The notes beneath the pieces were generated by a model. That model saw only the letters and a program-made list of their open reading frames with translations, was not told where the DNA came from and ran no database searches. DNA of 64,000 nucleotides from Macrostomum hystrix. Taxonomy: Eukaryota > Animalia > Platyhelminthes. Below, in pieces: positions 1,455 to 62,375 of this stretch. Positions within the stretch are counted from its first letter, which is position 1. The number at the start of each line of letters is the position of its first letter. The stretch is from the NCBI GenBank assembly GCA_950097015.1, contig CATNEN010000038.1, positions 2,666,001 through 2,730,000 on the forward strand. Direction: 5' to 3'. The translations under genes were made by a program, and so were the position numbers.

Positions 1455-1461
1455 ACCTTAT

Positions 1462-1488
1462 GCTGCTGCTGCTGCTGCTGCTGCTGCT
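1462..1488. repeat. (CTG/CAG)9 microsatellite just upstream of the DEG/ENaC ATG
   Basis: GCTGCTGCT run seen directly. Confidence 0.9.
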
Positions 1489-1959: not shown

Positions 1960-2220
1960 TTGCAGCCAGCGGTTCTGCCTATTCTGCTGACCCCTGAACA
2001 CACAGGCACACTCACACAGGTGTGTAAATCTGTCCTTGCCTGTCATCGTCAGGCAGTGTACACACAGTCTATCACTGTGTCTTGGTTGGCCCTCGTGGGT
2101 GTGAATCGCACGAAAAGCCAAAGGCCTTCTCACCGCAACTGCGCCCCATTTAAATGTGGTCTCGCTGGGGATACACTGCACCTGCTCAGGGACGTTCGTG
2201 CTAGCGGCAGACTCACCCCT
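1960..2220 (-). mobile_element. Degenerate SINE family A copy
   Basis: TTCTGCCTATTCTGCTGACCCCTGAACACACA...CATCGTCAGGCAGTGTACAC matches the family. Confidence 0.6.
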
Positions 2221-2856
2221 CCTAACTGTGAGTCTCAAATATGATTTGGCCATAAACGAAAATTTTGACTTTAACCATTTGACATTCTTATTTGAGCCAG
2301 CGTGCGGGAATGAAGGCAGTCGTGCAGGAATGAAATATGGCCAATACTCCACTGTTTTACACATGGACATCGTGCAGGAATGACACTCTCCGTTCCTGCA
2401 CGCAAACAATTTATTTATATGTATTTGATTTATTTTTAACCCCCTCTCTCTTTCGTCCCTCCACACTTTATTCTTAATATGAATTTTGTCTATGGTTAGA
2501 ATGGCTCTAATAAGAATGAAATTCATGAACGCTTACTCGTGCGTCTATGGCCAAATCACTCGTAAGCGTTCAAGAATTATACAGTCGAATAGTGAATCAT
2601 CGGTGCGGGGGCAGCGATTGCTTTAGTTTGAATTTAAAAAATGGCTTATAGGGTTTATTGACTTTGAACTACAACCAATCAGAAATAATTCAGTAGGTTA
2701 TAAATAGTATTATGATTCATAGTCTTATTTAACTGCATGTATTTGCCTTACTCTACTTATAGTAGGATCACGAGACCATTGACTATGTAAAAAGAATCGC
2801 AAAGTCTTTCAACACTTTTATAGTGGTGTTGGACACATGTGTTTGGTGTTTGCAGA

Positions 2857-3155
2857 GGTTGTAGCCTAGTGGTTAGGGCGTCGGACTCACGACTTGAAGG
2901 TCGTGGGTTCGATTCCCGACTCCACTGGAACAATTTGCGTCCTTTAGCAAGACACTTAACTCTGCATTGCTTCAGTTCACCCAGCTGTTAAATGGGTACC
3001 AGCATCAGCTGGGATAATTGAAGGTGGGTGTGGCGTCTCCCCAGTCCGTGGACTGAACAGCTGTACGCAGCCTTCAGATGCGCCGCGCATTAGCTGCGGC
3101 TGTGCTGTCCGCTGCACATCTGACCCAATCGGGACAGGTGTAATCAATTATTATT
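2857..3155 (+). mobile_element. tRNA-derived SINE family B with CORE-like central domain
   Basis: tRNA-like head GTAGCCTAGTGGTTAGG...GGTTCGATTCCC, central CCTTTAGCAAGACACTTAAC...CTTCAGTTCACCCAGCTGTTAAATGGGTACC and (ATT)n tail. Possible TSD GACACATGT. Confidence 0.8.
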
Positions 3156-3733
3156 GACACATGTTTTTCAGCATACAGTGGAATGTCGTGTATTTCACAG
3201 AACTTTCAAAATTCTGCGCCTGTTTATGAACCAAAAAAATACGAAATCTTCAATCGTTAAAAATGCCAGCTACCTTCTAAATCGGTCATATTTGGCAAGT
3301 CCATCTTAGCCAGGAGATTTATATTTCCTCTATATTTCGGTAACGTCTGTAAAATCCGTGGAAGTAACATAAGTGAGTAGTGTGTTGCATCTACTAGGAA
3401 CTGCAAATTAATTGAGAATAAAAAGTGCACAGTGAGTTACAGGGGCACAGGAATATAACAAACGTATAGAAGAGATATGCAGAGCTTACCTGACCCAGAT
3501 AATACATTTAAGTAATAAAATACCTCACAAATCTCTTTTCTCTTCTAATGCTGTGTTAGTTTTGTGTTTCATAAAGTAAAATATTCAAAATTATGATGAT
3601 GCCAACCAATTGAGTAGCTTCAGTCCCTTCTCTGTCTTTCATCTTAGTGGCTTTCTGAGCAGCTCGCATCTCTACTGCTAAATGCTAAATGCTGTCTACT
3701 GCACTGCTCGTCATCTCATAGCTTGTGTTGCTG

Positions 3734-6433
3734 TCACTCTCCAATGGCCCTGGCGTACAGCGGCTCGCTCTCCATCCTCCTGTTGTACATCAGCTGAGAG
3801 CGGGCGAGGTCGCGAACTTTGCTCATCTCGACTGCCTTCAGAGCGGCTTCAGCCCACTTGACACTCGTGTCCATGGGCTCCGTGGCTGAGCCACCCCGCT
3901 CCGGATAAACGTGGCACAGGACGCGCTGAAAAATAAACGATTCGTTCACAATTTTCCACCACACTTTCTACTCATAATAATAATACTAATTGCAGGAGGG
4001 CTGCGGGCAATGGCACATCGTTTGGTGACACTAGACCCGCAACCAGCGAGGAGGCAATTCTGCCCATTTCGCTGACTCCTGAGCACACACGCACACAGAT
4101 ACTGTACGCGGGCACACGCTCACACAGGTGTGTACATCTGCCCTGACTTTCTCATCGTCAAGCAGTGTACACTCTCACTGTGCCTTAAAGGTTGGCCCTC
4201 AAGGGCGTAAATTGCAAGACAAGCCCCCAAGTCTCTCTCCGCTGATGTGGCCCAAATGAATGTGACCTCGCTGCGAAATCGAGCTCAGGACCTTGGTGCG
4301 AGCAGCAAACGCCTTAGACCAATCTGCCACTCACCCCATTACTTCCTACTCGTAGTATAGTATATGAAATTTAAAGAATAAAATTTAATCATTCATTTCT
4401 TTCTAAAACACTGACGAACCTCCATCCTGTCGTTCTTGGGCTCCATGACGCCCCACTGCTGTCGCTTCTGCGCCATCTTCCATGGCGTCTGCTCAACTGG
4501 CCGCGCATTGGATTTGAGGAACGGCGCCTTCAGGGTAATCTCGCCGAACATTCGCAGGCAGGGTCCGGTCCGTTGATAATTAAAGTACAAATCAGAGTTG
4601 TCTGGCGTGTTCTCCTTCAGGAACATCGACACGGCGGCTGGTAATCCGTAGGGTTTGCGCCATTTGTAGGGCGGGAACAGCATGCCCATCATCTTGTCGC
4701 ACTGGTCAATTGAAGAATAGCTTGGACCGCGTAGGATCACCACGAGGTATTTCAGCCAGCGGTATTTGCCCATTCGGCGGTTCAGGATGCGGCGGGTGAC
4801 CTGAATTAAAAAATACTATTATTAATAACTAATAACTGATTACACCTGCCCCAACAGGGCCAGATGTGCAGCCGACAGCGCAGCCGCAGATATTGCGCGG
4901 CGCATCTGAAGGCTGCGTACAGCTGTCCATGGACTGGGGGGACGCCACGCCCAATCCTCAATTACCCCGGCTGATGCTGGCACCCATTTAACAGCTGGGT
5001 GAACTGAAGGAATGCAGAGTTCAAGTGTCTTCTTAAGGAAACCATTTTTTCCAGCATCAAGTCGTGAGTTCGACGCTCTAAGAACTAGGTTACTTCGTAC
5101 AAACTCCCAAAAAAGTAACAAAATCCGAGGAATGCAACAGTTGCTAAAAAGGCAATGGCCAAAAAAAAGAAAAAGCACAATTCAAGTTTGCTTGAATTGG
5201 TCAGAAAACTGTGGCGCGATACCTGTGAGTTCAGAGAGCTAATAATCCATGCGAGATCTCACCTCAATCTCGCATTTTGTCCTATTGGCAACAGATCGGA
5301 ATCGCTCTGGGTCAATCAAGAACGCCTGAATCATGTCGTCAGACAGCATCACAATGAACTCCTTGATGTGTACATCGGCGAATACGCTCATGCAGCCAAT
5401 GACCACGCCCTCCTTCTCCAGGTGACCGGTGGGCAGCTTCGTTCGTTTCGTCTTCATCGTTTCCTTGGCATCATTAGACATTTCGTTTGGTACGCGCATC
5501 ACGTCCACCTTCTCACAGTCCAGATAACGCTGATAATGCTTCATGGCGTCGTCCATGTCGCCCACGCCTTCGCCATCATCTTCGCTGCAGTCATCGCTGG
5601 GGCTAGGCACCGAGGCCTGATCGCTGGGGCTAGGCACCGAGGCCTGATCGCTGGAGAGCCCGCCAGGGCCGCTACTGACCCCGCCACTGAAGCCTCCGCT
5701 GACGCCGCCGTCTAAACTGGAGCTGGAGCTAGCCGGAATTGGTGCTTCCTCCGCCGAGCCCAGTAACTTATCCACCGTTTCGAACTCAATCGAGTTGCCG
5801 ACTCTGCCAGTGCGGAAACCGACATTACAGCCTCTGTTCACATCATGTTTATAGGGGGCAGTTTTCTAGTTCCCCGAATCCCTAAGTTCAGGGAGAGAAT
5901 CCCTAGTTTTCTAATCAGTTCAGGGGCAGACTTCTAATTAGTTAAGGTACGTTATCTTATCAGTTCTGAGGAGAGCTTGTGAGCCAGGAAAGCTGCCTTT
6001 GAGTCTAGCCAGATCTCGAACTCACACGTTGGAAGTGTTTGATTCGCTGTCCATGATGATGTTTATGTTTAGTTCTGTGCCAACTCCGTGACTCTGCAGT
6101 TCTGTTTCGAACCGAGTCTCCTTGCCCGAAGCGGTCTTGTGCACCTGGACATCCTTGATGCTGCAAAGCGTGTTATTGTTGTTCCTCTCCAGGCCAGCTC
6201 GTTTGGACTCGTACAGAAATATGTCACTGGATGGCTGAATTTTGCGGGGGTTATTAGCTTGCAATGGTGCCAGATTTTATGTGATATAGTATTCATATTT
6301 CAACCTTCAACTCCATTGTCAGCTTCTCTCCACTTGGATTACTGATTACCTTTTCGTAGATGCCTTCGCTGTCCAGTTCACTGTTTGTCAGCAGTCGCCT
6401 CCAGGCCTTGTGATTGTAATTATTATCTTCCAT
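3734..6433 (-). CDS. Unknown ~478-aa protein, 5 exons (6433-6350, 6234-6026, 5833-5263, 4800-4420, 3925-3734); Ser/Gly/Asp-rich linker then a possibly KH-like globular region
   Basis: All junctions are GT-AG with compatible phases and the joined frame is open to TGA at 3734. SINEs fall only in predicted introns. No family recognised. Confidence 0.55.
3975..4338 (-). mobile_element. Full-length SINE family A copy in intron
   Basis: tRNA head at about 4260-4338, conserved body, 3' stem-loop and (TTA)n tail at 3975-3990. Confidence 0.85.
4815..5095 (-). mobile_element. SINE family B copy with partly deleted head, in intron
   Basis: Reverse-complement match to the body of 2857-3155. Confidence 0.8.
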
Positions 6434-7727: not shown

Positions 7728-22696
<14,969 letters not shown>

Positions 22697-36029: not shown

Positions 36030-36395
36030 ATGAATAATAATAACTGCGGGAGGGCTGCGGGCAATGGCACTTCATTTGTTGACACTAGACCCGCAGCCAG
36101 CGAGGAGGCAATTCTGCCCATTTCGCTGACTCCTGAGCACACACGCACACAGATACCGTTCGCAGGCACACACTCACACATGTGTGTACATCTGCCCTGA
36201 CTTTCTCATCGTCAGGCAGTTTACACTCTCACTGTGCCTTGGAGGTTGGCCCTCAAGGGCGTAAATTGCACGACAAGCCCCCAAGCCTTCTCTACGCGGC
36301 TGCGCCCCAAATGAATGTGTCCTAGCCGCGGAGTCGAGCTTAGGGACCTTGGTGCGAGAGGCAAACGCGTTGAACCGCTCTGCCACTCACCCCCA
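36030..36395 (-). mobile_element. Full-length SINE family A copy
   Basis: Matches 3975-4338 end to end. Confidence 0.85.
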
Positions 36396-36971: not shown

Positions 36972-39380
36972 ATGGCTCGCACCAGCCTGCATGCCCTCTG
37001 CCGACTGAAGGTTCTCATTGTGCTGACCCTCATTCTGGTAAGATTCATGTACTACAGGGGTAGGCAAACTTATTTGCTGGCGGGCCAAAGAGAGAGCCTA
37101 AAAGACGACAGCGGGCCGCATTGACTGTATAAATATGAGATAGGGGAGAGATGAGACACGGGAGAGATGAGATACAGGAAAGATGGGACACGAGAGAGAT
37201 GAGACACGGGAGAGATAAGACAGGGAAGAGATTAGACACGGGAGAGATTAGACACGGGAGAGATTAGACACGGGAGAGATTAGATACGGGAGAGATGAGA
37301 CACGGGAGAGATGAGACACGGGAGAGATTAGACACGGGAGAGATTAGACACGGGAGAGATAAGACACGAGAGAGATAAGACAGGGAAGAGATTAGACACG
37401 GGAGAGATGAGACACGGGAGAAATGAGACGAGAGAGATAAGACAGGGAAGAGATTAGACACGGGAGAGATTAGACACGGGAGAGATTAGATACGGGAGAG
37501 ATTAGATACGGGAGAGATGAGACACGGGAGAGATTAGACACGGGAGAGATGAGACACGAGAGAGATGAGACACGGGAGAGATAAGATAGGGAAGAGATTA
37601 GACACGGAAGAGATTAGACACGGGAGAGATTAGATACGAGAGCGATGAGACACGGGAGAGATTAGACACGAGAGAGATGAAACAGGACACTGTAGATGTC
37701 AGAAGGGGCAACGGGCCGGATTTGGGAGCTTCGAGGGCCGCATCTGGCCCGCGGGCCGGAGTTTGCCGACCCCTGATGTACTACGAGCATTCATTCATTC
37801 GAAGAGCTTCTGCTTGGCATCGCTTTCAACCAAAATTCAACTCCACTCCACTCAGATCATCGCCACTTTAGTCTTCCTGGCAGTCATGAAGCCGTCAAGG
37901 TCAAGGTTTGCAAAGAGGCTCATTGTGAACAGAAAGGACGGACTGATACCGAAGATCTTGCACCAGACTTTCACAACGACACAAGTGTTCGTGGAATACA
38001 GGAAGCAAATTGAGAACTGCTTGAAGCTGAACCCTGACTGGCAGTACTACCTGTGGACCGATGACGACATTGTGGCCTTCATTAATGACCACTATCCGTA
38101 CTTCATGCGCAAGTACCTCGTCTACAAGATGCACGTACAGCGGGGAGACAGCATCCGGTACATGGCGCTGCACCACTTCGGAGGTGAGTTGCTTTTTCCA
38201 TATGTTCTCCTGGGAAAAGTACTCCATGATGGTAGACATATGACGTGTCGTCAAACTCGCGATTAAAAAAAATTATCCTGTCTATCATCTAAGGCTCAAG
38301 CGATGGGTGCCAAAATGGTCTAACTCGGTTCCTTTTCGCACCGAAGTCCTTGAGCTCGATTCCTGAGCTCGAGCAACATTCATTTGAGACGCAGCCGCGG
38401 AGAGAAGGCTTGGGGGCTTGTCATGCTATTTACGCTTTTTGAGGGCCAACCAAAAAAGGCACAGTGAAATGTACGCTGCCTGAGGATGCGAAAGTCAGAG
38501 CAGATGTACACACCTGAATATGTCAGCGTGTGTGTGCGAGAGTCAGCGAAATTGGCAGAACTGCCTCCTCGCTGGCTGCGGGTCTAGTGCCTAGTGTCCT
38601 GCAGTTATTATTATTATATATTATTATTATCATTCTGGCTTCCGCGCTGCCAGGAATCTACATCGACATGGATGTCGAGTGCGTCAAGCCGTTCTTTCCC
38701 AGCTTGTCCAACCTGACAGCATTCGTGGATCAGGAGGCCAAGGAGCACGCCGTCATTCTCTACGGCAAACGCTTCAGCGCGATGAACAGCGCGATGGGCT
38801 CCGTGCCCGGGCATCCGTTCTTCATGCGCCTCGTGATCGCCATGATGGAGGTCAGCGACAAGCAGGGAGGTGCTGGACAGACTACTGGGCCGGACCTGCT
38901 GACCAACCAGCTCACGAACTGGTGGGCGCACGAGTCGACAAGGAGGCACCCGGTGACCCTGCTCGAGCCACCCGTGTTTAGCCCGCTAATTGACAATGGC
39001 CTGCATAACTTTCGGTTGAAGTGCGAACAGCTTCGACGTAAGAGTTGGCTGACTTGTTAAAGTGACTCATGCTCAGTAGTGAGGAGTTTTAAACCTGTCC
39101 TATTGATAATATCATTCCAGGTTTACCATCGCCTGCTGATTCCTCTGGATCGAAGCTGCACGAGCTCCGGCTGCATCTGTGCCAGCAGTACGCCCGGCGC
39201 AACTGGAGACACGACCTCAGCGGCCCGGAGACGGTTGGTCGACACCTGTTCTTGCACCTGGGCTACCGGTGGGGCAACCGGAAGCCAAAATACTTCGACA
39301 TTCGCGACATTGCCAAGAATGTTATGTTCTACGCAATGAACAAGAGCTCCATGATTCCGCCTCAACAATTTATCAACTAG
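36972..39380 (+). CDS. GT32 DXD glycosyltransferase, paralog A (IPC mannosyltransferase Sur1/Csg1-like), type II membrane; exons 36972-37037, 37856-38183, 38654-39037, 39121-39380
   Basis: N-terminal TM anchor across exons 1-2; IPKILHQT, NPDWQYYLWTDDD, VQRGDSIRYM, GGIYIDMDVEC, NSAMGSVPGHPFF, TTGPDLLT. Junctions in phase. Confidence 0.88.
37055..37775. mobile_element. hAT-type MITE with internal 15-bp minisatellite, intron 1 of GT32-A
   Basis: TIRs CAGGGGTAGGCAAACT / AGTTTGCCGACCCCTG; 8-bp TSD ATGTACTA (37047-37054, 37776-37783); subterminal GGGCCG motifs. Confidence 0.92.
38335..38630 (+). mobile_element. SINE family A copy in GT32-A intron 2
   Basis: Family body plus (TTA)n tail. Confidence 0.75.
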
Positions 39381-40783: not shown

Positions 40784-43505
40784 ATGATTCGCAAACTGGG
40801 ATTGTCAACGGCATGTGGACTACGAAAGTTGATCAGGATAACGGCGCTTTTGGTGAGTAGTACTTGATGATGCTCTTGATTCATATCTTAATACAGGTGA
40901 GACAGGTGAATCAGGTGCTGCTGTGATGGTATTGGTGAGACAGGTGAATCAGGTGCTGCTGTGATGGTATTGGTGAGACAGGTGAATCAGGTGCTGCTGT
41001 GATGGTATTGGTGAGACAGGTGAATCAGGTGCTGCTGTGATGGTATTGGTGAGACAGGTGAATCAGGTGCTGCTGTGATGGTATTGGTGAGACAGGTGAA
41101 TCAGGTGCTGCTGTGATGGTATTGGTGAGACAGGTGAATCAGGTGCTGCTGTGATGGTATTGATGAGACAGCTGAATCAGGTGCTGCTGTGATGGTATTG
41201 GTGAGACAGGTGAATCAGGTGCTGCTGTGATGGTATTGGTGAGACAGGTGAATCAGGTGCTGCTGTGATGGTATTGGTGAGACAGGTGAATCAGGTGCTG
41301 CTGTGATGGTATTGGTGAGACAGGTGAATCAGGTGCTGCTGTGATGGTATTGGTGAGACAGGTGAATCAGGTGCTGCTGTGATGGTATTGGTGAGACAGG
41401 TGAATCAGGTGCTGCTGTGATGGTATTGGTGAGACAGGTGAATCAGGTGCTGCTGTGATGGTATTGGTGAGACAGGTGAATCAGGTGCTGCTGTGATGGT
41501 ATTGGTGAGACAGGTGAATCGGGTGCTGCTGTGATGGTATTGGTGAGACAGCTGAATCAGGTGCTGTTGTGTTGGTAAAGGTGAGACAGTTGAATCAGGT
41601 GCTGTTGTGTTGGTAAAGGTGAGACAGTTGAATCAGGTGCTGTTGTGTTGGTACAGGTGAGACAGTTGAATCAGGTGCTGTTGTGTTGGTACAGGTGAGA
41701 CAGTTGAATCAGGTGCTGTTGTGTTTGTACAGGTGAGACAGTTGAATCAGGTGCTGTTGTGTTTGTACAGGTGAGACAGTTGAATCAGGTGCTGTTGTGT
41801 TTGTAAAGGTGAGACAGTTGAATCAGGTGCTGTTGTGTTTGTACAGGTGAGACAGCTGAATCAGGTGCTGTTCTAAGAAGATTCAGAAGATCTTTGCTGG
41901 TTTAAATAATTTCAGCTATTTTTCGCTATGCTCTACCTCGCGCTGAGACCATCGCCTGAACTAACGCACAAGGGCTCAATCAAGGTTCAAGCTCGTGATG
42001 GAAGGATCCCGAAAATCCTGCACCAGACGTTTTCAACGCCGCGTGTTTTCACGGAGTACAGGAGGTACATCAAGCGCTGTCTGGAGCTGAATCCTGACTG
42101 GGAATACTTCTTCTGGACTGATGAGGACATTGTGGCATTCATTAACGACCACTATCCTTACTTCATGCGCAAGTACCTCACTTTTAAGATGCACGTGCAG
42201 CGTGGAGACAGTATCCGGTACATGATTCTGCACCACTTTGGAGGTGAGATTAGGCCCATGAGCAGTTTTTTATATACCTTACCTTTTGAGCAATGTTTCC
42301 TTCGAGCAACTCTCCCCATAATATTTCGCTGACTCCTGAGCAGACACGCACACAGATACCGTTCGCAGGCACTCGCTCACACAGGTGCGCACATCTGCCC
42401 TAAATTTCTCATCGTCAGGCAGTGCACACTCACTGTGCCTTGGAGGTTGGCCCTAAAGGGCGTAAATTGCACGACAAGCCCCCAAGCCTTCTCTACGTGG
42501 CTGCGCTCCAAATAAATGTTCCCTCGCCGCGGAATCGAGCTTAGGGACCTTGGTGTATTTGGCAAGCGCGTTTGACTGCCACTCAGACCTCAACTTTCAC
42601 CTCTGAGCACTTTCACCATTTGAGAATATTCCATTTTTAGAACTTTCACCTTTAAGCAACTGTAACCTTTTAACTTTTTAATGCCCGCCTGCGAAAAAAA
42701 TTTCAAGAACCTTTGAGGTTTTAAATTAGTTTGACGATTGTTGCATGTTAAAGGCTTGTCAAATTTATTTATAACTCAAGTTAATGCCTACTCAATGCCT
42801 CACAATGCTGTGAACCCAGTAAAATGGCCTTTTGAAGCACTGAAATTGAGCAAATATATGAAAGTGTTGTTGCTGTGCTCATTCCGGCTTCCGCGCTGCC
42901 AGGAATCTACATCGACATGGATGTCGAGTGCGTCAAGCCGTTCTTTCCCAGCTTGTCCAACCTGACAGCATTCGTGGATCAGGAGGCCAAGGAGCACGCC
43001 GTCATTCTCTACGGCAAACGCTTCAGCGCGATGAACAGCGCGATGGGCTCCGTGCCCGGGCATCCGTTCTTCATGCGCCTCGTGATCGCCATGATGGAAG
43101 TCAGCGACAAGCAGGGAGGTGCTGGACAGACTACTGGGCCGGACCTGCTGACCAACCAGCTCACGAACTGGTGGGCCGAAAACTCGACCAGAAACCACGA
43201 AGTGACCATGCTGGAGCCGATCGTGTTCAGCCCCTTTCTTGACACAGCCACCCACGACTTCAAGAAGCTGTGTGCTGATTATCAAACCGGAGGTGGGTTT
43301 ACCCGTATTTTTCTGTTCTTGTTTGTTTTTCTGGCATTCGCAATTCGCGCTCGTCTTTTTACAAAGCTTCTCACCATCATCTCTGTACCTGCGACCTGCG
43401 TAGTCCTTTGATATAGTCCTGTGATGCAGGCACATTCGTGTGATATGCTGATACATTTTGAATGCCTGCATGGCAAGGCCGGGGAGCACGAGAATTTCCC
43501 AAATG

Positions 43506-50435: not shown

Positions 50436-50647
50436 CACCCGCGCTTTAAATCAACTTTTATTACGAGCGTATTATCAACTATCAACAGAGGAACACGGAA
50501 TTTCAATTCGCACCATTTCTAGTCCAGTAATTACATTTTCAGCTTGTAAAATTCTGGCATATCTAAAAACCTGATCTGCAAGAGAACAAGACACTACCAC
50601 CTAGACGCATAAATTTTAAACAGAAATTGACTCGAAGACAAGGTCTG

Positions 50648-51926
50648 ATGGGCCGAAAGAAGATTCAGATTGCTCGGATTGAGGATGAACGAACTCGGCA
50701 GGTGAGTTCGGTCTCACCTGATGTCATTCTACAATTGGAGTTTGAGTCTTATAGAGATCTCATCTTGAGAATCAAATCTCATAGAGATCTCATCAAACCT
50801 TATGAGTCAAATCTCATAGAGATCTCATCAAACCTACCTGCCCCATCAACAGGTAACGTTCACAAAGCGCAAATTTGGTCTAATGAAAAAGGCCTACGAA
50901 TTGTCGGTCCTGTGCGACTGCGAGGTAGCCCTGATTGTGTTCAACGGCAACAACCGCCTGCACCAGTACGCCAGCACCGACATGGACCGCCTGCTGCTGC
51001 GCTACACTGAGTACAGCTCACCGCATGAGAGCCGCACCAACAGGGACATTGTTGAGGTACCTGCATTCCCTACCTGACCTACCTATCTACCTGCATTCCG
51101 TACCTGACCTACCTATCTACCTGCACTCCCTACCTGACCTACCTATCTACCTGCAATCCCTACCTGACCTACCTATCTACCTGCATTCCCTACCTGACCT
51201 ACCTATCTACCTGCATTCCCTACCTACCTATCTACCTGCATTTCATACCTGACCTACCTATCTACCTGCATTCCCTACTTACCTATCTACCTGCACTCCC
51301 TACCTGACCTACCTATCTACCTGCATTCCCTACCTGACCTACCTATCTACCTGCATTCCCTACCTGACCTACCTATCTACCTGCATTCCCTACCTGACCT
51401 ACCCATCTACCTGCATTTCATACCTGACCTACCTATCTACCTGCATTTCATACCTGACCTACCAATCTACCTGCATTCCATACCTGACCTACCTATATAC
51501 CTGCATTCCCTACCTGACCTACCTATATACCTGCATTCCCTACCTGACCTACCTATCTACCTGCAAAACTCGTCTATCTTATTGCAGTACCTCAGTCGAA
51601 AGTCGGGTGGCTCAGGCGACCTGGACGACTCTGATCAACCGGCTTCGCCACCAGCGCAACAGCGGCAGCAGCAGCAGCGGCAGCAGCCGTTGCGTCAGTC
51701 AACCAGACTGCAGTCCCATCTGACCGTCAGCTCGGCAACAGTTGAAAAGGTTGAGGCCACTCCGCCGACTTCACCGCCGCTAGAGCAGCAGCAGCAGCAG
51801 CAGCCGCAGCAGCTGGTCCTGCACCTGGATCAATACCCCAATGACTCACCAGTTGTAGACTTTCTTACTCAGCTCAAGTCTGAAGGTAACGACTCTGATG
51901 GCGTAATTCTGAGCGGCCCGCTCTGA
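50648..51926 (+). CDS. MEF2: MEF2 MADS-box transcription factor, ~198 aa (exons 50648-50701, 50853-51056, 51588-51926)
   Basis: [18 protein letters not shown]|[30 protein letters not shown]...[30 protein letters not shown] with canonical MEF2 intron positions; Q-rich tail with PTSPP. Confidence 0.93.
51058..51565. repeat. 30-bp minisatellite (TACCTGCATTCCCTACCTGACCTACCTATC) filling MEF2 intron 2
   Basis: Starts at intron position +2. Confidence 0.92.
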
Positions 51927-53764: not shown

Positions 53765-54120
53765 ACCCTGAGCACACACATTGTCAGGCAGTGTACACTT
53801 TCACTGTGCATTGTAGGTTGGCAACTCAAAAGCAAAAACGGCACAATTAGCCCCCAAACCTTCTCGCCGCTGCTGCGCCCCAAGTTGATGCGGTCCCATC
53901 TCGGAATCGGGCTTAGGAATTTTAGCTAATTGATCCTAGATGACTCCCCTTACCTTCGACGGCACAAAGACTAAAGCCTAAAGGACCTCGAAGGCACAGT
54001 GAAAGTGTACACTGTCTGACGATAAGAAAGTCAGTGCAGATGTACACACCTGTGTGTGTGTGTGCTCACAGGCTCACCAAATGATGTGCTTGTGCCCGCA
54101 GCCCTCCTGCAATTATGATC
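53765..54120. mobile_element. Two partial SINE family A copies in opposite orientation (53765-53920 -, 53985-54120 +)
   Basis: Family body motifs on both strands. Confidence 0.65.
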
Positions 54121-54257: not shown

Positions 54258-57200
54258 TCAGATCGGCGCCTCCCTCGGCTCCACGAGGATCTCGTTGACA
54301 GCAACATGCGGCGGCTGCTGCACAGCGAACAGCACCGCCCGGGCCACGTCCTCCGCCTCCAGCATGGTGTACTTGCCCTCGCCGCTGAACTCCCGGTGGG
54401 CCTCCGCGTCCGCGTCGTCTCGGCAGGCCTGCCGAAAATTGGTTGATAAATGATTCCAGTTGTTACACCTTAGATGTACTTTGTGGTCCCGAGTTCGTAT
54501 CTCAGCCCTAGGGAAGCAAATTGTATCCTAGAGCAAGACACTTGATTCCCCATAGATTAGGGGTTGTAGCCTAGTGGTTTTGGGCGTCGGACTTGACTTG
54601 AAGGTCGAGGATTCGAATCCTGACTTCAGAGCAATAAAATTTCCCTCTAGCTGAAAACTTAAAGAGTCCGTTCAGTTGACCAAACTCGAAAATGGGTTCG
54701 AGGAGTTAACTGATGCTGGTTGAGGCGTCCTCCCTCCCATTCCATGGACTGAACAGCTGTGCGAAGCCTTTGAAAGCGCGAGAAATTGCTGCGCCTGTGG
54801 CACTGGCTGTACATCTGGCCCTACTAAAGCTATTCTAGTTCAGGCCGCAGCCAATCACCTGCAGCGGCGTGCGCACGTCACCGGGCTGCACGCAGGTGAC
54901 CCGCAGGCCGCGGCTGGCCACCTCCAGGCGCAGCGCTCTCGAGTAGCCCTCGACAAAGAATTTGGAGCCCGTGTACACGGCCAGGCCTGGGAACGGCGCC
55001 CTGCCAGCGTCGCTGCTCAGATTGACGATGTGGCCGTGGCCGCGCTCCAGCATGCCCGGCAGGGCGGCCTCCACCGAGTGCACCAGGCCACGACAATTCA
55101 CGTCGATGGTCCGGTCGGAGAGGTGCGTCAAGCCGCTGAAAGCTCTGGTGTAGTACATCACGCCGGCGCTGTTGACCAGGATGTCCGGCTGGCCCAGTAG
55201 GCTGCGGCAGCGGGCGAGGGCGGCTTCAACTTCGGCGCGGACGGTGACATCGGCCGGGCAGGCGACAGCGACGCCCTGAGCGGCCAAGATGCCCTGGCGA
55301 ACCTGTTCGAGCTGGTCAGCCCGCCTGGCGACCAGCGCGACCTGGCAACCGTCCCTGGCCAGAGCCTGGGCCACCGCCTGTGACAGCGGCAAGGATGAGA
55401 GCAGCTCAGATAGATAACAGCAGCCTGCTCTCCGTGTTTGTTTACGCTCGCACGCCCTCTAATTGTACTTTCTCATCTCTCCCTCTATCTGTTCAACTTC
55501 TTAGCTAACCTTCATTTCTCTTTCCTCTCCCTCGTCTCTGATTGGCTAGCCGTTCGTCTCTATTTCCTTACCCCCTCTTTTCAGCTCTTACCCTCTGGCC
55601 CGACCTTATCTCTTGGTTAATATATTTAATTTTCGGCCTAGTGCTGTAAAGACTGGCTCTTTCAGCAGAGACTCAATTTGCTTTAAGTCACAGCAGTTCC
55701 CATGTGTCACTAACCTGTCCGATGCCACTGCTCGCCCCAGTTACCAACGCAACCTTGCCCACCAATGCGCCACCAGTTGTGTTCCGACGGACCCTGGGCA
55801 GAAGGCCCCTTTCTGCCAGTCTGGCGATGTAGACGGCCAGCAGACTGGAGTCGATGGCCGGGTAGCCGCTCTCCACGCCCAGACTGGGCAGGGCTGCGCG
55901 GAGCTGGCGCGAGTCGAAGGTGCTCAGTCTGGCGAAGTACTCGGCCCCGCTAGCTCCGGCTGGCGCCAGCTCGTCTAGTAGGCGCAGCAGCGCTCCGATT
56001 GGCTGACAGGCATCGGCAAGGCGCCGCAGCTCAGCCAGCCAATCAGCGTAGTCCACTCGGCGCAGTGCGTAGCCGCCAACCGTCAGCCAATCGCAGAGCA
56101 GATCGAAGCTGATTGGCTGTGGATTGACCGCGTGAAAAATCTTGCCGGCGTGCAAGGTCAGCTGGGCCATGGATCGCACGATGAGCTCGCTTGTGAAATC
56201 CACTGGTGTGAACTCGAGACGCCAGTTAAGGCGAGGCGCCAGACCGCTACGCAGCACAGCCTGCCAGCAGTGGAATTAAATCGGATGGATTGATTAAGTT
56301 GAATCAATTCAACTGATACTAGGTTTCACAGTTGTGACTTTTATTTCAGTGGCTCAGTTAAGTTTGGTTCTACAGGTTTGACTTTTACACTTTTGACGTT
56401 TGGTTCTGCAGGTGTGACGTTTGATTTCAGTTAGTTGGGAACCTCTAACTGAGAACCTCAACCAGATCCTCCTCAACTTGAGCAGCCCCACTCCCAGATC
56501 CTCAACTTGAGCAGCCCCACTCCTAGATCCTCAACTTGAGCAGCCCACTCGCATTTTTGCAGGTGCGACGTTCGAATTTACTGGTGCGACGTTTGGTTTT
56601 ACAGGTGCGACGTTTGGTTTTACAGGTGCGACGTTTGGTTTTACAGGTTTGATTTTTACACTTGTGACATTTAGTTCTACAGGTTAGGTTTGGTTCTGCA
56701 GGTGTGACGTTTGGTTTTACAGGTGCGATGTTTGGTGTTAAAGGTGTGACGTTTGTTTCAAAAGGTGTGACGTTTGGTTCTACAGGTGTGACGTTTGTTT
56801 TCAAAAGGTGTGACGTTTGGTTCTACAGGTGTGACGTTTGGTTCTACAGGTGTGACGTTTGGTTCTACAGGTGTGACGTTTGGTTCTACAGGTGTGACGT
56901 TTGGTTCTAAAGGTGCGACGTCAGCTATAATAAACATGAGATGCTTATATTGCTTCTGTATGTGCGAAGTTTGGTTCTACAGGTATGGCCTAAATGTATT
57001 TAGGTTTGGTAATTATTCTTCCCATTTGAAAAGTGCAAAGCAGTTTCTAGCTAGCTTAGTAGCTATGGGGAGCTAATGCGTAATTAATAATTACCTGCAG
57101 CATCAGCAGGGTCAGGTCCTGCGGATTCCACGCGGCGTTAGTCCTGTCGCCGGCCTGATTGCCCAGCCGGTACACCACCACCGGCATGCCGCGGGATCGC

Positions 57201-60200
57201 GCCCTGAGCAGCAGCTGCTCCGCCACCCACTTGGTCTGGCTGTAGCCGTCGTCCAAGTCGCCAGCGTGGACGCTGGTATCGGCGTCCTCTCGACAGTCGG
57301 CCATGCCGTGCGGGAAGACGGCGTCGGTGCTGACGTAGTGCACCGGCTTGACGCGAACTGCGGACGCGAACAAAATTACATTCTGGGTGCCCAGCACGTT
57401 CGGGCCGTACAGCGCCTGTGAGACAGATTCCGGGGGGGACGTAAAGGTGCTTCTCCAAAAAAGTTATTGACAGCTCAAAAACTGCACTCACACTGTAGGG
57501 ATAAATCAAATTCACGTAGGCTCCAGCGTGGATCACCACGTCAATCTCGCTGCTCAGGAAAGCGTAATCATCCTCTGAGAGGCCGAACTTCACCAAGCTG
57601 AGATCACCTGAGAAAAAAACAAATTAATCGAATTTGATTATGTTAGACATCCACCTGTTAGACATCCACCTGTTAGACAGACATCCGCCTGTTAGACAGA
57701 CATCCACCTGTTAGACATCGACCTGTAAGAGGGATTCATCCAGAACCATTGTGCCCAACTGACCTTTGATGGCGGTGACCCGGGCATCGAACGAAGCCGC
57801 CAGCTCCTTGGTCTTGTCGTCCTCCTGTCCGCCGGGTCTCAGGATGAGAAACTGCTCAAGGGTGGCTCGCAGCCTCCGCTGCAGGGCCCCGCTGTCGCCA
57901 CCGCCGGTGTCGCGAACCAAGCAAAACACCTGGGTGTCGGTGAGGCGCAGCAGATCCCGCAGCAGGAAGGCGCCCAGAAAGCCAGTAGCGCCGGTTAACA
58001 GGACTCGGCCGCGGGTCCAGCGCGACTTGTTGAAGTGCGGATTGCGCCAGAATGCGCGTAGCTGAATGTCCAAGCTGTGAGGCGCCAAACAAACTCACTT
58101 TGCGAATACAATTGCGGCTTTTTTTCCAGTTACTGAGATACTACAGTCACAACCCCATATCCCCAGGTTTAGCAGTCGTCCTCCAGATCCTCAACTTGAG
58201 AAAGCAGCCACACTCCTAGATCCTCAACTTGAGCAGCCCCACTCCCAGATCCTCAACTTGAGCAGCCCCACTCCCAGATCCTCAACTTGAGCAGCCACAC
58301 TCCCAGATCCTCCTCAATTTGAGCAGCCCCACTCCCAGATCATCAACTTGAGCAGCTACACTCCCAGATATTCAACTTGAGCAGTCGTCCTCTGAGATAC
58401 TCATGTTGAGCGGGCACACTCCCAGGAAGGGAAGCTTGAGAAAAATTATAATTTTAAATGTGCTCGCTCACTCGGACGCCTGCGGCTGGTCGTGATTGGC
58501 CACCTCGCTCTTCAAATCCACGGTGCGCGCCTCGGCCGCCGGCTGCTCCTCGCTGCCGCGCGAGGTCGCCGAAACTATTAGGCGCGCCATCTCCTGCACC
58601 GTGGGGTACTGGAACAGCTCCTTCACTGACAGCTCGCAGCCCAGCTGGTCGTTGACTCGAGACAGCAGCTTGGTGGCCAGTAGGGAGTGCCTGAGAGGAA
58701 ATTATGTTGAAAAAAAGCTCGACTACTGAACTTATGACATCAGCCCCGTTGGAACACCTTGGAACATCATGAGTTCGAATCCTTCCCGATGAGGCCACAA
58801 TCGTTTTCGGAGAGCGTCCGCTTGGAGCTTGGATTAGACGTACGATGAGAAAGTCAGGTCCGATGTACTCACCTGTGTGAGTGTGTGCCTGTGTGCCTGT
58901 GTGCTGTATATGCGTGCGTGTGCCCAAACGTACCTGCGAACGCTTGTAAGTTGAGCTAATAAAATAATAATAACTGCTGGCAATGGCACATTGGCACTAG
59001 ACTCGCAGCCAGCCAGGAGACGATTCTGCCCATTTCGCTGACTCCTGAGCTCACACGAACACAGGAGTGTACATCTGCTCTCACTTTCTCATCGTCAGGC
59101 AGTGAAAAATTTCAGTGTGCCTTGGAGGTTGGTGTAAATTGCATGACAAGCCACCAGGCCTTCTCTCCGCGGCTGCGACCCAATTTAATGTGGCCTCGCC
59201 GCGGAATCGAGCTCAGGGACCTTGATACGAGACGCAGAGGCGTTAATCGTTGGTAAATTTTATTAAATCAAACAATAAAAGCCCCTGGATTTCACGCCGC
59301 TTCATCATCAACACAGCCAGGCCTCACCCGCCATAGTCGAAGAAGCTCTCCGCTTCATCATCAACACAGCCAGGCCTCACCCGCCATAGTCGAAGAAGCT
59401 CTCCGTTTCATCATCAACACAGCCAGGCCTCACCCGCCATAGTCGAAGAAGCTCTCCGTTTCATCATCAACACAGCCAGGCCTCACCCGCCATAGTCGAA
59501 GAAGCTCTCCGCTTCATCATCAACACAGCCAGGCCTCACCCGCCATAGTCGAAGAAGCTCTCCGCTTCATCATCAACACAGCCAGGCCTCACCCGCCATA
59601 GTCGAAGAAGCTCTCCGCTTCATCATCAACACAGCCAGGCCTCACCCGCCATAGTCGAAGAAGCTCTCCGCTTCATCATCAACACAGCCAGGCCTCACCC
59701 GCCATAGTCGAAGAAGCTCTCCGCTTCATCATCAACACAGCCAGGCCTCACCCGCCATAGTCGAAGAAGCTCTCCGCTTCATCATCAACACAGCCAGGCC
59801 TCACCCGCCATAGTCGAAGAAGCTCTCCGCTTCATCATCAACACAGCCAGGCCTCACCCGCCATAGTCGAAGAAGCTCTCCTGAATGTCGATCTCCTTAA
59901 TGTCCAGTGTGGCCATCCAGATTGCTGCGAGGCTCTTCTCCGTCGCCGTCTGTGGCAGGAAGGAGCAGTCGAGGCTCTCATGGGCTTTGTCGAACGGTGG
60001 CAGGGAGGCCTTGTTCAGCTTGCCCACCGCGCTCACTGGCAGGCTGCGGGAGATTCCAAGGGTTCAGGGGGTTTCATCAATGAAGTTTGAGCACTGTTGA
60101 GGAATCACTCGGCCTGACACTCACTCTGCCAGGAAGACGAAGTAGCTCGGTATCATGTAGAAAGGCAGCTTCCTCTTCAGAGCCGACCTCAGCTGCCTCT

Positions 60201-62375
60201 TGGTGAGCTCCGGGTTGGACGGCACCACGTAGGCCACCAGGAACTTGTCCTCACCTTCGGCGCCTTTCACCAGCACTACACAGGCATTCACGAGGCCGCT
60301 GTCCAGCAGGGCGGCCTCGATGGCTTGCACCTCGACAGAGTAGCCGCGGATCTTCACCATGCTGTCGCAGCGGCCGCAGATCTCCAGGCTGCTGTCGGAC
60401 AGCAGGTAGCCCCAGTCGCCCGTGCGGTAGAGCCGCTCCTGGTCCGGCTGGCAGCCGCCGCTCAAAGCTTTCGGCGCCTGAATGAACTTGCTGCGGTTCA
60501 GGTCCGGCCGCTTCACGTAGCCCTTGGCCAGGGTGGGACCAGCCACGTAGATCTGTGCAGGGTCGATTGCAGTTCGATTCATTTCGATGATGGATTTTGA
60601 TTTCGGAGGGATTTTTATGGATGTCATATGGCGGCGCATGTTCATAAATACGATGCGAATCATTTTATCCCCCGTCGGATATACGTATTTTGTTACGTGT
60701 GAAGTTTGCTTACTAAGGACTGCCTGTTCGAACTACTCCGCATATAATGTATAGTAGCACCGATTGAGCAACGCGAGTGTGCTTTTAGTTGTTAGATGTA
60801 CAGCTAAGCATAGCATTACATAAGCAAAGCATTAAGTGATGGATGTACTACATAACCGTCCCGCATTTGTGCTCAACCTGACCTCTCCGGCTGCTCCAAC
60901 TGGCTGCGGGTTGAGCTCGCTGTCCAGGATGACGACTCGAACTCCGGGCAGCAGCCAGCCGACTGGGCAGAACTTTCGCCTCTCCTCAGGCCGGCGCTGG
61001 ATGCGCTTATAGTACTCGGTCAGGTCGCAGGCAGCAACGTCGTGGCACTCGGAGATGCTGTACAGGTTGATGACTCGAGTTGTCGGGAGTAGCGTTTGGC
61101 AGCGTTCCAGCAGGCTGGTGGTGACCACCTCACCGCAGAGCCAGATTTGTCTGATTATTATTAAATTGGTTTAACCAATCTACGTCAAATATTCACAGGA
61201 TTTTTGATTGATCTACTCAACTCAACAATCTGAAGCCTCTAAGTCTAGATACCGATTGATTTTGCTCCGAGACTTACTTAAGACTGGCGCAGGCCTCCCG
61301 CACTCCGGCGGCCTCGGAGTCCAGCACGGTCTCCAGCAGTGATGGCGTGAAGAGCATCCTCGTGATGCGATTTCGCCGCATATAATCCAGCAGCTTCGGC
61401 GGATCGTAGATCACATCGTCCGGGATGACAAACAGGCACTGGCCCTTCATCAGCGGCCGGAGCATTTCCCAAACGAAGAAAACGTTGCAGGCCTCACGTT
61501 CTGGCCCGTCAGACTCGTCGTAGGGATAGGTCACATGACGCCAGTGGTAGGAGAAGACGGCGCCGCGGTGCGGCATGCCGATGCCCTTCGGCTTGCCCGT
61601 TGTGCCGCTGGAGTACACGATGAAGGCCAGGGCATCGAGATCGACCGTCACGGGCACGCAGCTGGTGTCGCAGCGCAGCTCTTCGAGGTCGCGCCGCCAG
61701 TCGTCGTTGAAGACCCAAGCCAGGCTGCGCGCCGACTCCGGCAAGCGGTTAAGAAGGCCCGGCTTGGTCAGCACCGCTCGTGGCTCGGCGTCGGACAGGA
61801 CACTCTCGATTAGCGATTCCGGGTACGACAGGTCCATGGGGAGGTAGGCCCCGCCTGATGAGATTTGAACAAGAGAGGTCGCCTCATAGTACTTATAGTA
61901 GAGAGAATATATTGTCTAACTATTTGTTGTGATTGCTGAGAATAGTTGCGCATTGTGAAGCGTAAAAAAACTTTGGAGCTCGTGCTGAAGCTGTTCTGGA
62001 CTAGTCCGGTCCTCGATAATGTAAATTTGCAGATTAAAACTTATTTTTCGGGTGCGTATTTTTTGTGAGCAATGTAGCTGAGTCTAGAGTTCACTCACCG
62101 GCCTTGAGAATGGCAATATAGGCCACAACGTACTCAATGCAGCGCTCCATGTAGATGATGCCGCACTGCTCAACATCCACACCTTTGAGCCGTAGCTCAG
62201 CGGCCAGCTTGCTGGACAGCTGGTCGAGCTCGGCGTATGTCAGCTGACTGCCGGAGCCGTCCGACACCGCGACGCGGTCCGGTGTCAGCTGGGCCTGACG
62301 GCAGAACTGAGCGTGCAGACTGCCAACGGTCTGGTACGCATCCGCCGCCGATTGAGTCGTCGACTGAGTCGGCAT
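54258..62375 (-). CDS. NRPS-like A-T-R-R multidomain reductase (glycine betaine reductase ATRR-like), ~1312 aa, 12 exons: 62375-62099, 61854-61278, 61150-60883, 60552-60125, 60043-59858, 58690-58472, 58074-57764, 57607-57492, 57415-57095, 56260-55715, 55377-54859, 54428-54258
   Basis: A domain: LTYAEL, LKAGGAYLPMD, YSSGTTGKPKG, NLYSISE, GEIYVAGPTLAKGY, YRTGD, GRCDSMVKIRGYSVE, LPFYMIP, VGKLNK. T domain: FFDYGG|HSLLA. Thioester reductase: LLTGATGFLG, GYSQTKWVAE. SDR: VTGASSGIG, LVNSAG, NLSS, YTGSK, PGDV. Exons total 3939 nt, GT-AG, no stops. Confidence 0.93.
54488..54825 (+). mobile_element. Degenerate SINE family B copies in the last intron of the ATRR-like gene
   Basis: GGTTGTAGCCTAGTGG...GGATTCGAATCC and TCCATGGACTGAACAGCTG. 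Confidence 0.65.
56320..56920. repeat. 21-bp minisatellite (GGTGTGACGTTTGGTTCTACA) with embedded 29-bp CAGATCCTCAACTTGAGCAGCC units (56460-56550)
   Basis: Seen directly; intron 9 of the ATRR-like gene. Confidence 0.85.
58180..58420. repeat. ~29-bp minisatellite (CCCAGATCCTCAACTTGAGCAGCCCCACT), ATRR-like intron 6
   Basis: Seen directly. Confidence 0.85.
58770..59250. mobile_element. Tail-to-tail SINE family A copies (58770-58940 +, 58965-59250 -) in ATRR-like intron 5
   Basis: GAGTTCGAATCC...GATGAGAAAGTCAGG on +; reverse copy with CTTTCTCATCGTCAGGCAGTG and GGAATCGAGCTC. Confidence 0.7.
59297..59879 (-). repeat. 11 x 53-bp tandem repeat made of the exon-5 3' end plus 5' splice site of the ATRR-like gene
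   Basis: Unit on the - strand: AGAGCTTCTTCGACTATGGCGG|GTGAGGCCTGGCTGTGTTGATGATGAAGCGG. The first copy overlaps the real exon/intron junction. Confidence 0.95.

What the first reader, a model, noticed from the sequence alone, without database searches (positions are those of the whole stretch)
54258..62375. Intact, intron-containing A-T-R-R NRPS-like enzyme (ATRR-like) in an animal genome: possible betaine-to-choline pathway
Seen: one ~1312-aa reading frame over 12 GT-AG exons with adenylation, thiolation (GGHSL), thioester-reductase and C-terminal SDR domains, all recognisable catalytic motifs intact, and no condensation domain. It sits among clearly metazoan genes (cPKC, MEF2, DEG/ENaC), and its introns carry the same SINE families as the rest of the window, which argues against contamination. 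Established: this architecture defines fungal ATRR (Aspergillus nidulans), which adenylates glycine betaine and reduces it in two NADPH steps to choline; animals are usually described as only oxidising choline to betaine. Inference: this animal may run the reverse route, linking osmolyte pools to choline, phosphatidylcholine and acetylcholine supply, through ancient retention or an old horizontal transfer.
Basis: partly seen in the sequence, partly recalled or inferred. Interest (0 to 1): 0.88.

Follow-up and report, generated by a model that had tools for sequence, protein, structure and literature searches.

The report
Flatworm copy of betaine-to-choline enzyme ATRR
This Macrostomum flatworm carries an intact, spliced and transcribed gene of the ATRR family, whose fungal form turns glycine betaine into choline. 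The family was already reported in invertebrates and is named in mollusc annotation, so this is a sound but ordinary new member whose activity in animals is still unassayed.

Summary
On the minus strand, 62375-54258, there are 12 exons, 11 GT..AG introns and 3936 coding bases (1312 aa). The domain order is adenylation, thiolation, thioester reductase, then short-chain dehydrogenase, with no condensation domain and all checked catalytic motifs intact.

Transcript contigs from public runs join 9 of the 11 junctions exactly, with no mismatches. The gene is single-copy here. Its introns hold repeats found elsewhere in the window, and its neighbours are a PKC-like gene and MEF2.

It belongs to the ATRR family. 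It aligns end to end with a Penicillium ATRR and is about 85% identical to a Macrostomum lignano UniProt entry mislabelled "Fatty acid synthase". It keeps the pocket residues F201, W204 and W270, with Asp where fungi have Glu304, as in every non-fungal member sampled.

In the tree animal ATRRs form one clade that largely follows animal phylogeny, so vertical retention explains the gene and recent transfer or contamination is excluded.

The novelty claim does not hold. Hai et al. 2019 already reported atrr in invertebrates, RefSeq names a Haliotis orthologue "glycine betaine reductase ATRR-like", and a nematode orthologue was studied in 2024.

Betaine-to-choline activity here is inferred, not shown. 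A word search of this scan's notes found no earlier ATRR note.

The parts
62099..62375 (-). Exon 1: start codon at 62375 and the N-terminal part of the adenylation domain (motif LTYAEL at 62243-62226)
   Evidence: Pfam AMP-binding 6e-16. The donor at 62099 is joined to 61854 in transcript contigs. The stop-to-stop frame shows this is the first ATG after a stop.
61278..61854 (-). Exon 2: adenylation core with SSGTTGKPKG (61612-61583) and the pocket motif FFVWE (61480-61466), which aligns to F201 and W204 of fungal ATRR
   Evidence: Pfam 6e-22, motif coordinates, pocket columns, junctions.
60883..61150 (-). Exon 3: IWLCGE (61146-61129, W aligned to W270) and NLYSISECHD (61068-61039, Asp aligned to fungal E304)
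60125..60552 (-). Exon 4: adenylation motifs A6-A9 (YVAGPTLAKGY, YRTGD, GRCDSMVKIRG, LPFYMIP) and AMP-binding_C
   Evidence: Pfam PF13193 1e-6, motifs, junctions.
59858..60043 (-). Exon 5: the A10 lysine (GKLNK, 60024-60010) and the first half of the carrier domain, ending ...FFDYGG
   Evidence: The donor at 59858 is the one used in contigs of two studies.
58472..58690 (-). Exon 6: begins HSLLA (58689-58675), which holds the phosphopantetheine-attachment Ser of GGHSL, followed by a linker
57764..58074 (-). Exon 7: start of R1 (thioester reductase), NADPH motif GATGFLG (57992-57972)
   Evidence: Pfam NAD_binding_4 6e-11..
57492..57607 (-). Exon 8: R1 segment GDLSLVKFGLSEDDY...IHAGAYVNLIYPYS
57095..57415 (-). 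Exon 9: R1 catalytic Tyr/Lys in YSQTK (57244-57230)
   Evidence: Pfam NAD_binding_4 3e-18.. The Tyr corresponds to the R1 Tyr mutated in Hai et al..
55715..56260 (-). Exon 10: R1 C-terminal subdomain, linker, and the start of R2 with TGASSGIG (55741-55718)
   Evidence: The acceptor at 56260 is confirmed. The donor at 55715 rests only on collinearity with M. lignano.
54859..55377 (-). Exon 11: R2 short-chain dehydrogenase with NSAG (55173-55162) and the catalytic YTGSK (54975-54961)
   Evidence: Pfam adh_short 2e-42. 95% identity to M. lignano and 51% to Penicillium ATRR.
54258..54428 (-). Exon 12: C-terminus ...PHVAVNEILVEPREAPI plus the stop codon
   Evidence: The C-terminal motif is shared with fungal ATRRs.
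59297..59881 (-). Tandem array at the exon 5 / intron 5 boundary: 11 copies of a 53-nt unit made of the last 23 nt of exon 5, the GT donor and 30 intron bases. Not part of the protein.
   Evidence: TRF: 11.0 copies, 99% matches. Sequence read directly. Transcripts use only the first copy.
58974..59245 (.). Interspersed repeat inside intron 5, with copies elsewhere in the window and very high depth in the transcript assemblies
   Evidence: 19 blastn hits for intron 5 to the rest of the window, the longest eight at 69-80% identity. Depth in the 58800-59399 bins is about 435-4750 (2400-4750 in 59000-59199) against about 2-18 in the exon bins.

Best explanation
This is the native, single-copy, expressed orthologue of ATRR in a Macrostomum flatworm other than M. 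lignano. ATRR is an NRPS-like enzyme with the domain order adenylation, carrier, thioester reductase (R1), short-chain dehydrogenase (R2).

Proposed mechanism, inferred from the fungal enzyme:
1. The A domain binds a small quaternary-ammonium carboxylate, most likely glycine betaine, in an aromatic cage (Phe and Trp of FFVWE, Trp of IWLCGE) with a nearby acidic residue (Asp of ECHD).
2. It adenylates the substrate with ATP and loads it as a thioester on the phosphopantetheine arm attached to the Ser of GGHSL.
3. R1 releases betaine aldehyde using NADPH.
4. R2 reduces the aldehyde to choline with a second NADPH.

Shown here: the gene structure, domain order, intact motifs, transcript splicing, family membership, and vertical descent within animals.

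Inferred: the substrate and product.
For: - Structure and domains.
- Transcripts: a 4208-nt contig and others join junctions 1-9 with no mismatches, and intron bins have zero depth.
- Copy number: one match in the 220-Mb genome.
- Collinear alignment: Penicillium ATRR residues 10-1278 align along all the exons. That reference is 94% identical to P. cosmopolitanum and 73% identical to a protein named 'Glycine betaine reductase ATRR [Exophiala dermatitidis]'. It has F201, W204, W270 and E304 at exactly the numbers given by Hai et al..
- M. lignano orthologue P0366: about 85% identical to the window and 37% identical over its full length to Exophiala ATRR.
- Pocket: F, W and W are kept, with Asp at position 304 as in all 44 non-fungal members sampled.
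- A-domain fragment tree rooted on NRPS adenylation domains: the ATRR family is separated at SH-aLRT 99, and the window exon pairs with M. lignano at 96.
- Full-length tree: Metazoa form one clade at 99, with Trichoplax, then Cnidaria, then Bilateria.
- Supporting enzymes in the genome: an AASDHPPT-type PPTase domain, a GMC oxidoreductase and BHMT-type methyltransferase domains.
- Nematode MiATRR relieved betaine toxicity in yeast.
Against: - No animal ATRR has been assayed in vitro in the papers I read. The nematode evidence is indirect.
- The animal clade lies far from the characterised fungal clade: 37% identity and a branch of about 1 change per site.
- Zhang et al. report that five of the ten pocket-code positions differ between nematode and A. 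nidulans ATRR.
- Position 304 is Asp, not Glu, and W270 is not conserved across animals. The cage model is therefore not a strict family signature.
- The cage was proposed from a homology model, not a solved structure.
- Junctions 10 and 11 were not covered by the single read-laying run.
Confidence: 0.7

Rival explanations
1. The chemistry is the same (adenylation followed by two NADPH reductions of a carboxylate to an alcohol), but the physiological substrate is another small cationic acid, not glycine betaine. Candidates are another betaine or a sulfonium analogue. The product would then not be choline.
For: - All sampled non-fungal members have Asp instead of Glu at position 304, and they differ from fungi at neighbouring pocket positions: NLYSISECHDV against NCYSACETHEI, and LCG against LNG.
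- Five of ten code positions differ between nematodes and A. nidulans.
- The fungal enzyme shows partial activity on a sulfonium analogue.
- There is no in vitro assay of any animal enzyme.
Against: - F201 and W204 are invariant across the family. Macrostomum also keeps W270, and Asp keeps the negative charge.
- Fungal ATRR accepted only the smallest betaine from a panel.
- Nematode MiATRR relieved glycine betaine toxicity in yeast.
- R2 is the best conserved domain, at 51% identity to the fungal one.
Confidence: 0.2
2. The gene is decaying or largely unproductive. The 11-fold tandem duplication of the exon 5 donor would divert splicing to downstream copies, and each of those places a TGA directly after ...FFDYGG. 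The result would be an adenylation-only fragment or nonsense-mediated decay.
For: The array is real in the assembly: 99% identity, 11 copies. Every copy offers the same donor context. Reading through gives GGG TGA.
Against: - Contigs from two studies all use the first donor and skip the whole array.
- All 12 exons are open with intact motifs.
- Identity to M. lignano is highest in the catalytic domains and lowest in the linkers, at 95% in R2 against 65-77% in linkers. This is the pattern expected under purifying selection.
- Contigs drop rare variants, so minor use of other donors is not excluded.
Confidence: 0.04
3. The locus is contamination or a recent horizontal transfer from a fungus, alga or bacterium.
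For: - The architecture looks microbial.
- The gene region is more GC-rich than its flanks.
- Fragments labelled Rubrobacter or Actinomycetota carry the same pocket motif.
Against: - Eleven spliceosomal introns whose removal is seen in transcripts.
- Host repeats inside the introns.
- PKC-like and MEF2 neighbours on the same contig.
- An 85%-identical orthologue in M. lignano.
- Placement inside a metazoan clade that largely follows species phylogeny.
Confidence: 0.01

Closest known systems
Fungal ATRR, glycine betaine reductase (Aspergillus nidulans; Hai, Huang and Tang 2019)
   Same: - The same A-T-R1-R2 order and length (1312 against about 1270-1280 aa), aligned end to end.
- No Asp at the PheA-235 position.
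- F201, W204 and W270 equivalents are present.
- The R1 and R2 catalytic Tyr/Lys and NADPH motifs are present.
- The C-terminal ...HVAVNE(I/V)L(V/I)EPR(E/D).PI motif is shared.
   Different: - About 37% identity, in a separate long-branched clade.
- Asp instead of Glu304, and several neighbouring pocket residues differ.
- 11 introns here, whereas the Penicillium reference copy is one uninterrupted reading frame.
- Activity is untested.
Nematode MiATRR (Meloidogyne incognita; Zhang et al. 2024, PMC11050029)
   Same: An animal member of the same clade with the same architecture and Asp at position 304. In the tree, nematode sequences sit with insects inside Metazoa.
   Different: The three plant-parasitic nematode sequences I aligned (Heterodera, Globodera, Bursaphelenchus) have His at the W270 position, where Macrostomum keeps Trp. 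I did not retrieve MiATRR itself. Its functional evidence comes from yeast growth and RNAi, not enzyme assays.
RefSeq 'glycine betaine reductase ATRR-like' (Haliotis rufescens) and other invertebrate orthologues
   Same: The closest named full-length relative of the M. lignano orthologue, at 54% identity, with the same pocket residues.
   Different: Named by annotation only. It comes from a different phylum.
Lys2 / alpha-aminoadipate reductase and carboxylic acid reductases (A-T-R)
   Same: Adenylation, carrier loading and NADPH thioester reduction to an aldehyde.
   Different: They have a single R domain, no fused SDR and different substrate pockets (from established knowledge). I had no such sequences, so they were not placed in a tree.
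Other animal NRPS-like enzymes: Ebony, ACSF4-U26/AASDH, mollusc FmtATR (PMC11869996)
   Same: Monomodular A-T enzymes encoded by animals.
   Different: Ebony and AASDH have no reductase domains (from established knowledge). FmtATR has a formylation domain and one R domain that performs a four-electron reduction. Apart from the gene itself, the own-genome search with exon 2 found no match at E <= 0.001.

Membership tests
ATRR (NRPS-like glycine betaine reductase) | Domain order A-T-R1-R2 in one polypeptide, with no condensation domain | tested here: met
   Pfam exon by exon. Collinear tblastn with Penicillium ATRR residues 10-1278 and with M. lignano P0366 residues 6-1307.
ATRR (NRPS-like glycine betaine reductase) | A-domain pocket lacks Asp235 (PheA numbering) and has the aromatic residues F201, W204 and W270 | tested here: met
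   The window has NVFFVWE and IWLCGE. These align to F201, W204 and W270 of a Penicillium ATRR that carries those residues at exactly those numbers.
ATRR (NRPS-like glycine betaine reductase) | Anionic residue E304 next to the cage | tested here: inconclusive
   The window has Asp (ECHD). All 12 rows of the fungal clade (9 named fungi, 3 metagenome contigs) have Glu, and all 44 non-fungal rows have Asp. The charge is kept but the side chain is shorter. The effect is unknown.
ATRR (NRPS-like glycine betaine reductase) | Carrier-domain Ser for phosphopantetheine (GGHSL) | tested here: met
   GG|HSL spans the exon 5 / exon 6 junction, and the joint is seen in transcripts. An AASDHPPT-type PPTase domain is present in the genome.
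ATRR (NRPS-like glycine betaine reductase) | R1 catalytic Tyr and R2 catalytic Tyr plus the NADPH Gly motif (Y811, Y1178 and G1036 in A. nidulans) | tested here: met
   GATGFLG and YSQTK in R1; TGASSGIG, NSAG and YTGSK in R2. The roles of these residues are from Hai et al..
ATRR (NRPS-like glycine betaine reductase) | A domain groups with ATRRs rather than with other adenylation domains | tested here: met
   Exon 2 tree rooted on 15 NRPS adenylation domains: the ATRR family is separated at SH-aLRT 99 and the window pairs with M. lignano. Lys2, CAR, Ebony and AASDH were not available as outgroups.
ATRR (NRPS-like glycine betaine reductase) | [quoted passage not shown] | not testable with these tools
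   Needs an enzyme assay or isotope tracing.

The most novel reading that the evidence does not exclude
ATRR may be an ancestral animal gene passed down vertically from before the split of placozoans, cnidarians and bilaterians. Its animal form, with Asp304 and a variable 270 position, would give many invertebrates, including flatworms, a working reductive route from betaine-type osmolytes to choline or to a related amino alcohol. On this reading, the textbook view of animal choline-betaine metabolism as one-way would hold only for lineages that lost the gene.
Probability: 0.3. Interest if true: 0.55.

Novelty: new member of a known kind. Interest (0 to 1): 0.3.

Why it matters
If the enzyme works as in fungi, this flatworm can make choline from glycine betaine at the cost of one ATP and two NADPH. 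That would link osmolyte pools to phosphatidylcholine and acetylcholine supply. The idea is already in the literature for invertebrates, so the value here is practical.

- Macrostomum is a laboratory flatworm genus. From general knowledge, M. lignano has RNAi and transgenesis.
- The gene model is now verified at nine junctions, and the UniProt label of the orthologue ("Fatty acid synthase") is wrong.
- The full-length tree gives a clear picture of vertical descent across animal phyla. I did not see this stated in the papers I read.

A direct enzyme assay of any animal ATRR remains the missing piece.

Tried and rejected
- The search of protein representatives with exon 2: the 150 best hits were all multi-module megasynthases of about 4,100-7,900 aa, whose several A domains add up their scores.
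All 80 loci were unrelated AMP-binding genes. The longer matches were 22-36% identical, and higher figures came only from 30-60-residue pieces around the P-loop. The ATRR-specific pattern was swamped.
- Pfam on ten long ORFs elsewhere in the window gave nothing useful, because they are low-complexity or repeat frames. Motif searches then located the PKC-like and MEF2 exons.
- PF01648 (ACPS) gave no hit in the genome. PF22624 (AASDHPPT_N) did. The first blank probably reflects a small domain split by introns.
- L096 (GC 74%) first looked bacterial, but it proved almost identical to Aureococcus anophagefferens.
Searches were run exon by exon by reference, and the M. lignano database protein P0366 stood in for the full length in alignments and trees.
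- Contamination, recent transfer and pseudogene readings were considered and rejected (see the rival explanations).

Full report
**What is there**

The finding's interval holds a minus-strand gene. Stop-to-stop frames, together with a junction search guided by the Macrostomum lignano protein P0366, give 12 exons:
- E1 62375-62099
- E2 61854-61278
- E3 61150-60883
- E4 60552-60125
- E5 60043-59858
- E6 58690-58472
- E7 58074-57764
- E8 57607-57492
- E9 57415-57095
- E10 56260-55715
- E11 55377-54859
- E12 54428-54261, with the stop at 54260-54258

All 11 introns are GT..AG. Phases are consistent and no exon contains a stop. The exons add up to 3936 nt, or 1312 aa.

**Domains and motifs**

Pfam gives AMP-binding on E1-E3, AMP-binding_C on E4, NAD_binding_4 on E7 and E9, and adh_short on E11 at 2e-42. 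There is no condensation domain.

These motifs are intact:
- A domain: LTYAEL, SSGTTGKPKG, YRTGD, GRCDSMVKIRG, LPFYMIP, and the A10 Lys in GKLNK.
- Carrier: the GG|HSL serine motif, split by intron 5.
- R1: GATGFLG and YSQTK.
- R2: TGASSGIG, NSAG and YTGSK.

The two Tyr motifs correspond to the residues whose mutation inactivated R1 and R2 in A. nidulans ATRR.

**Native and expressed**

- The assembly is 220 Mb in 42 contigs and has one match to exon 2.
- Earlier scan notes call the genome a Macrostomum flatworm. I confirmed the genus: UniProt A0A1I8I4I0 of M. lignano (P0366, labelled "Fatty acid synthase") is collinear with all exons at about 85% identity. The window therefore comes from a congener, not from M. 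lignano itself.
- Neighbours on the same contig include a C2 domain and a kinase exon of a PKC-like gene, and a MEF2-type MADS box.
- Introns 5 and 11 contain interspersed repeats with other copies in the window.
- Four runs of one 2020 study hold 0.49-0.50 of the gene's sampled words. That equals the exon share of the interval, 3939 of 8118 nt.
- I laid three of those runs, plus one from a second study, on 56200-62199. Their contigs join junctions 1 to 9 at exactly the predicted bases (CT..AC on the plus strand) with no mismatches. One contig is 4208 nt long. Intron-only bins have zero depth.
- Because the genome holds a single intron-bearing copy, these contigs represent spliced RNA.
They rest on collinearity with the M. 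lignano protein.

**What it is**

- The exon 2 search returned about 120 fragments. Most of those that span the region carry the motif CNVFF(V/I)WE.
- A degenerate-DNA scan for that motif in metagenomes yielded nine uninterrupted reading frames of about 1290-1440 codons, two of them running off a contig end.
- One of them, L120, is a Penicillium gene. It is 94% identical to P. cosmopolitanum and 73% identical to a protein named "Glycine betaine reductase ATRR [Exophiala dermatitidis]".
- L120 has F, W, W and E at positions 201, 204, 270 and 304. These are the numbers Hai et al. give for the aromatic cage and acidic residue of A. nidulans ATRR.
- Residues 10-1278 of L120 align collinearly to the window's exons.
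- P0366 is 37% identical over its full length to the Exophiala ATRR.

**Pocket residues**

I aligned 56 family members.
- F201 and W204 are invariant in all 55 rows that cover those columns.
- Position 304 is Glu in every fungus and Asp in every non-fungal member, Macrostomum included.
- Position 270 is Trp in fungi, in Macrostomum and in many other animals. It is Val, Ile, Leu, His or Met in others, and His in the three plant-parasitic nematodes sampled.

The flatworm therefore has the most fungus-like cage found among animals, with a conservative Glu-to-Asp change. The cage itself comes from a homology model, not a solved structure.

**Phylogeny**

- A tree of the exon 2 region, rooted on 15 generic NRPS adenylation domains, separates the ATRR family at SH-aLRT 99. 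It pairs the window with M. lignano at 96.
- In a full-length tree (1232 columns), the 33 animal sequences form one clade at 99.
- Within that clade, Trichoplax branches first, then cnidarians, then bilaterians. Ambulacraria, tunicates, molluscs with annelid and nemerteans, and insects with nematodes are all recovered.
- Macrostomum sits inside Bilateria. Its pairing with an acoel joins two long branches and should not be trusted.
- This pattern fits vertical inheritance within animals.
- The deeper history is unresolved. Fungi sit on a long branch, ichthyosporeans group with stramenopiles, and the tree has no outgroup.

**Comparison with the literature**

- Hai et al. [quoted passage not shown]
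- Zhang et al. 2024 describe A-T-R1-R2 genes across nematodes. They show that MiATRR relieves betaine toxicity in yeast and matters for parasitism.
- A 2025 paper mentions molluscan glycine betaine reductase homologues.
- RefSeq already uses the name "glycine betaine reductase ATRR-like" for Haliotis.

What is still missing, in the papers I could read, is an in vitro assay of any animal enzyme.

**Mechanism and its standing**

By homology, the enzyme adenylates a small quaternary-ammonium acid and loads it on the carrier arm. R1 reduces it to the aldehyde and R2 reduces the aldehyde to the alcohol.

Glycine betaine to choline is the most likely reaction, at about 0.65-0.7. A different small cationic acid is the main rival, at about 0.2.

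The genome also has an AASDHPPT-type PPTase domain, a GMC oxidoreductase that could be choline dehydrogenase, BHMT-type methyltransferase domains, and PEMT-family hits. These are family-level matches only.

**Tools and limits**

- The representative-library search and the genome-contig scan were uninformative.
- The joined protein was not built or searched. P0366 served as its stand-in.

**Verdict**

The ATRR assignment is supported at family and orthologue level. The function is inferred. Novelty is low: this is a new member of a known kind.

Noticed in passing
window 59297-59881 (minus strand, exon 5 / intron 5 boundary): There are eleven near-identical (99%) tandem copies of a 53-nt unit made of the last 23 nt of exon 5, the GT donor and 30 intron bases. 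Every copy offers the same donor. Any donor after the first, or read-through, puts TGA directly after ...FFDYGG and would give an adenylation-only product. Transcript contigs from two studies use only the first copy. Another note of this scan (s1-850749) flags the same array.
   Followed up: partly
window 58800-59400 (intron 5); other copies at about 220-711, 1963-2171, 4001-4316, 36055-36371, 38346-38619, 42379-42552 and 53779-53917: An interspersed repeat of about 270 nt, 69-80% identical between copies. Its depth in the transcript assemblies is about 435-4750 across these bins (2400-4750 in 59000-59199), against about 2-18 for the ATRR exons. It is a highly transcribed SINE-like family.
   Followed up: partly
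window 56470-56550 (intron 9) and 58183-58425 (intron 6): The same 29-nt tandem unit (CCAGATCCTCAACTTGAGCAGCC.CACTC) forms arrays in two different introns of the gene. Intron 9 also has an array of about 18 copies of a 21-nt unit at 56555-56921.
   Followed up: no
proteins P0162, P0165, P0203, P0217: Fragments labelled Actinomycetota MAG, Rubrobacter sp., Rubrobacter marinus (from a 4.16-Mb contig) and Deltaproteobacteria MAG carry the ATRR pocket motif (C/R)(N/S)(V/I)FF(V/I)WE. In the exon 2 tree, the three actinobacterial ones group with the fungal clade at SH-aLRT 96. This bears on the published statement that atrr is exclusive to eukaryotes.
   Followed up: partly
protein P0366 (UniProt A0A1I8I4I0, Macrostomum lignano) and many animal orthologues: Animal ATRR orthologues carry misleading automatic names: 'Fatty acid synthase', 'linear gramicidin synthase subunit D', 'Dehydrogenase/reductase SDR family member 11', and 'L-cystine transmembrane transporter' in Aureococcus. 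Only Haliotis is named ATRR-like.
   Followed up: no
full-length tree: The ichthyosporean ATRRs (Sphaeroforma, Creolimax) group with the stramenopiles Hondaea and Seminavis at SH-aLRT 100, not next to animals. The history of the family outside Metazoa is therefore not simply vertical.
   Followed up: no
window 12270-20134 (+) and 50567-51074 (+): There are PKC-like exons (C2 domain, and a kinase with [11 protein letters not shown]) and a MEF2-type MADS box. The start of the MADS box (MGRKKIQI) and its continuation ([11 protein letters not shown]) lie in two overlapping frames, which suggests a short intron or a frame change there.
   Followed up: partly
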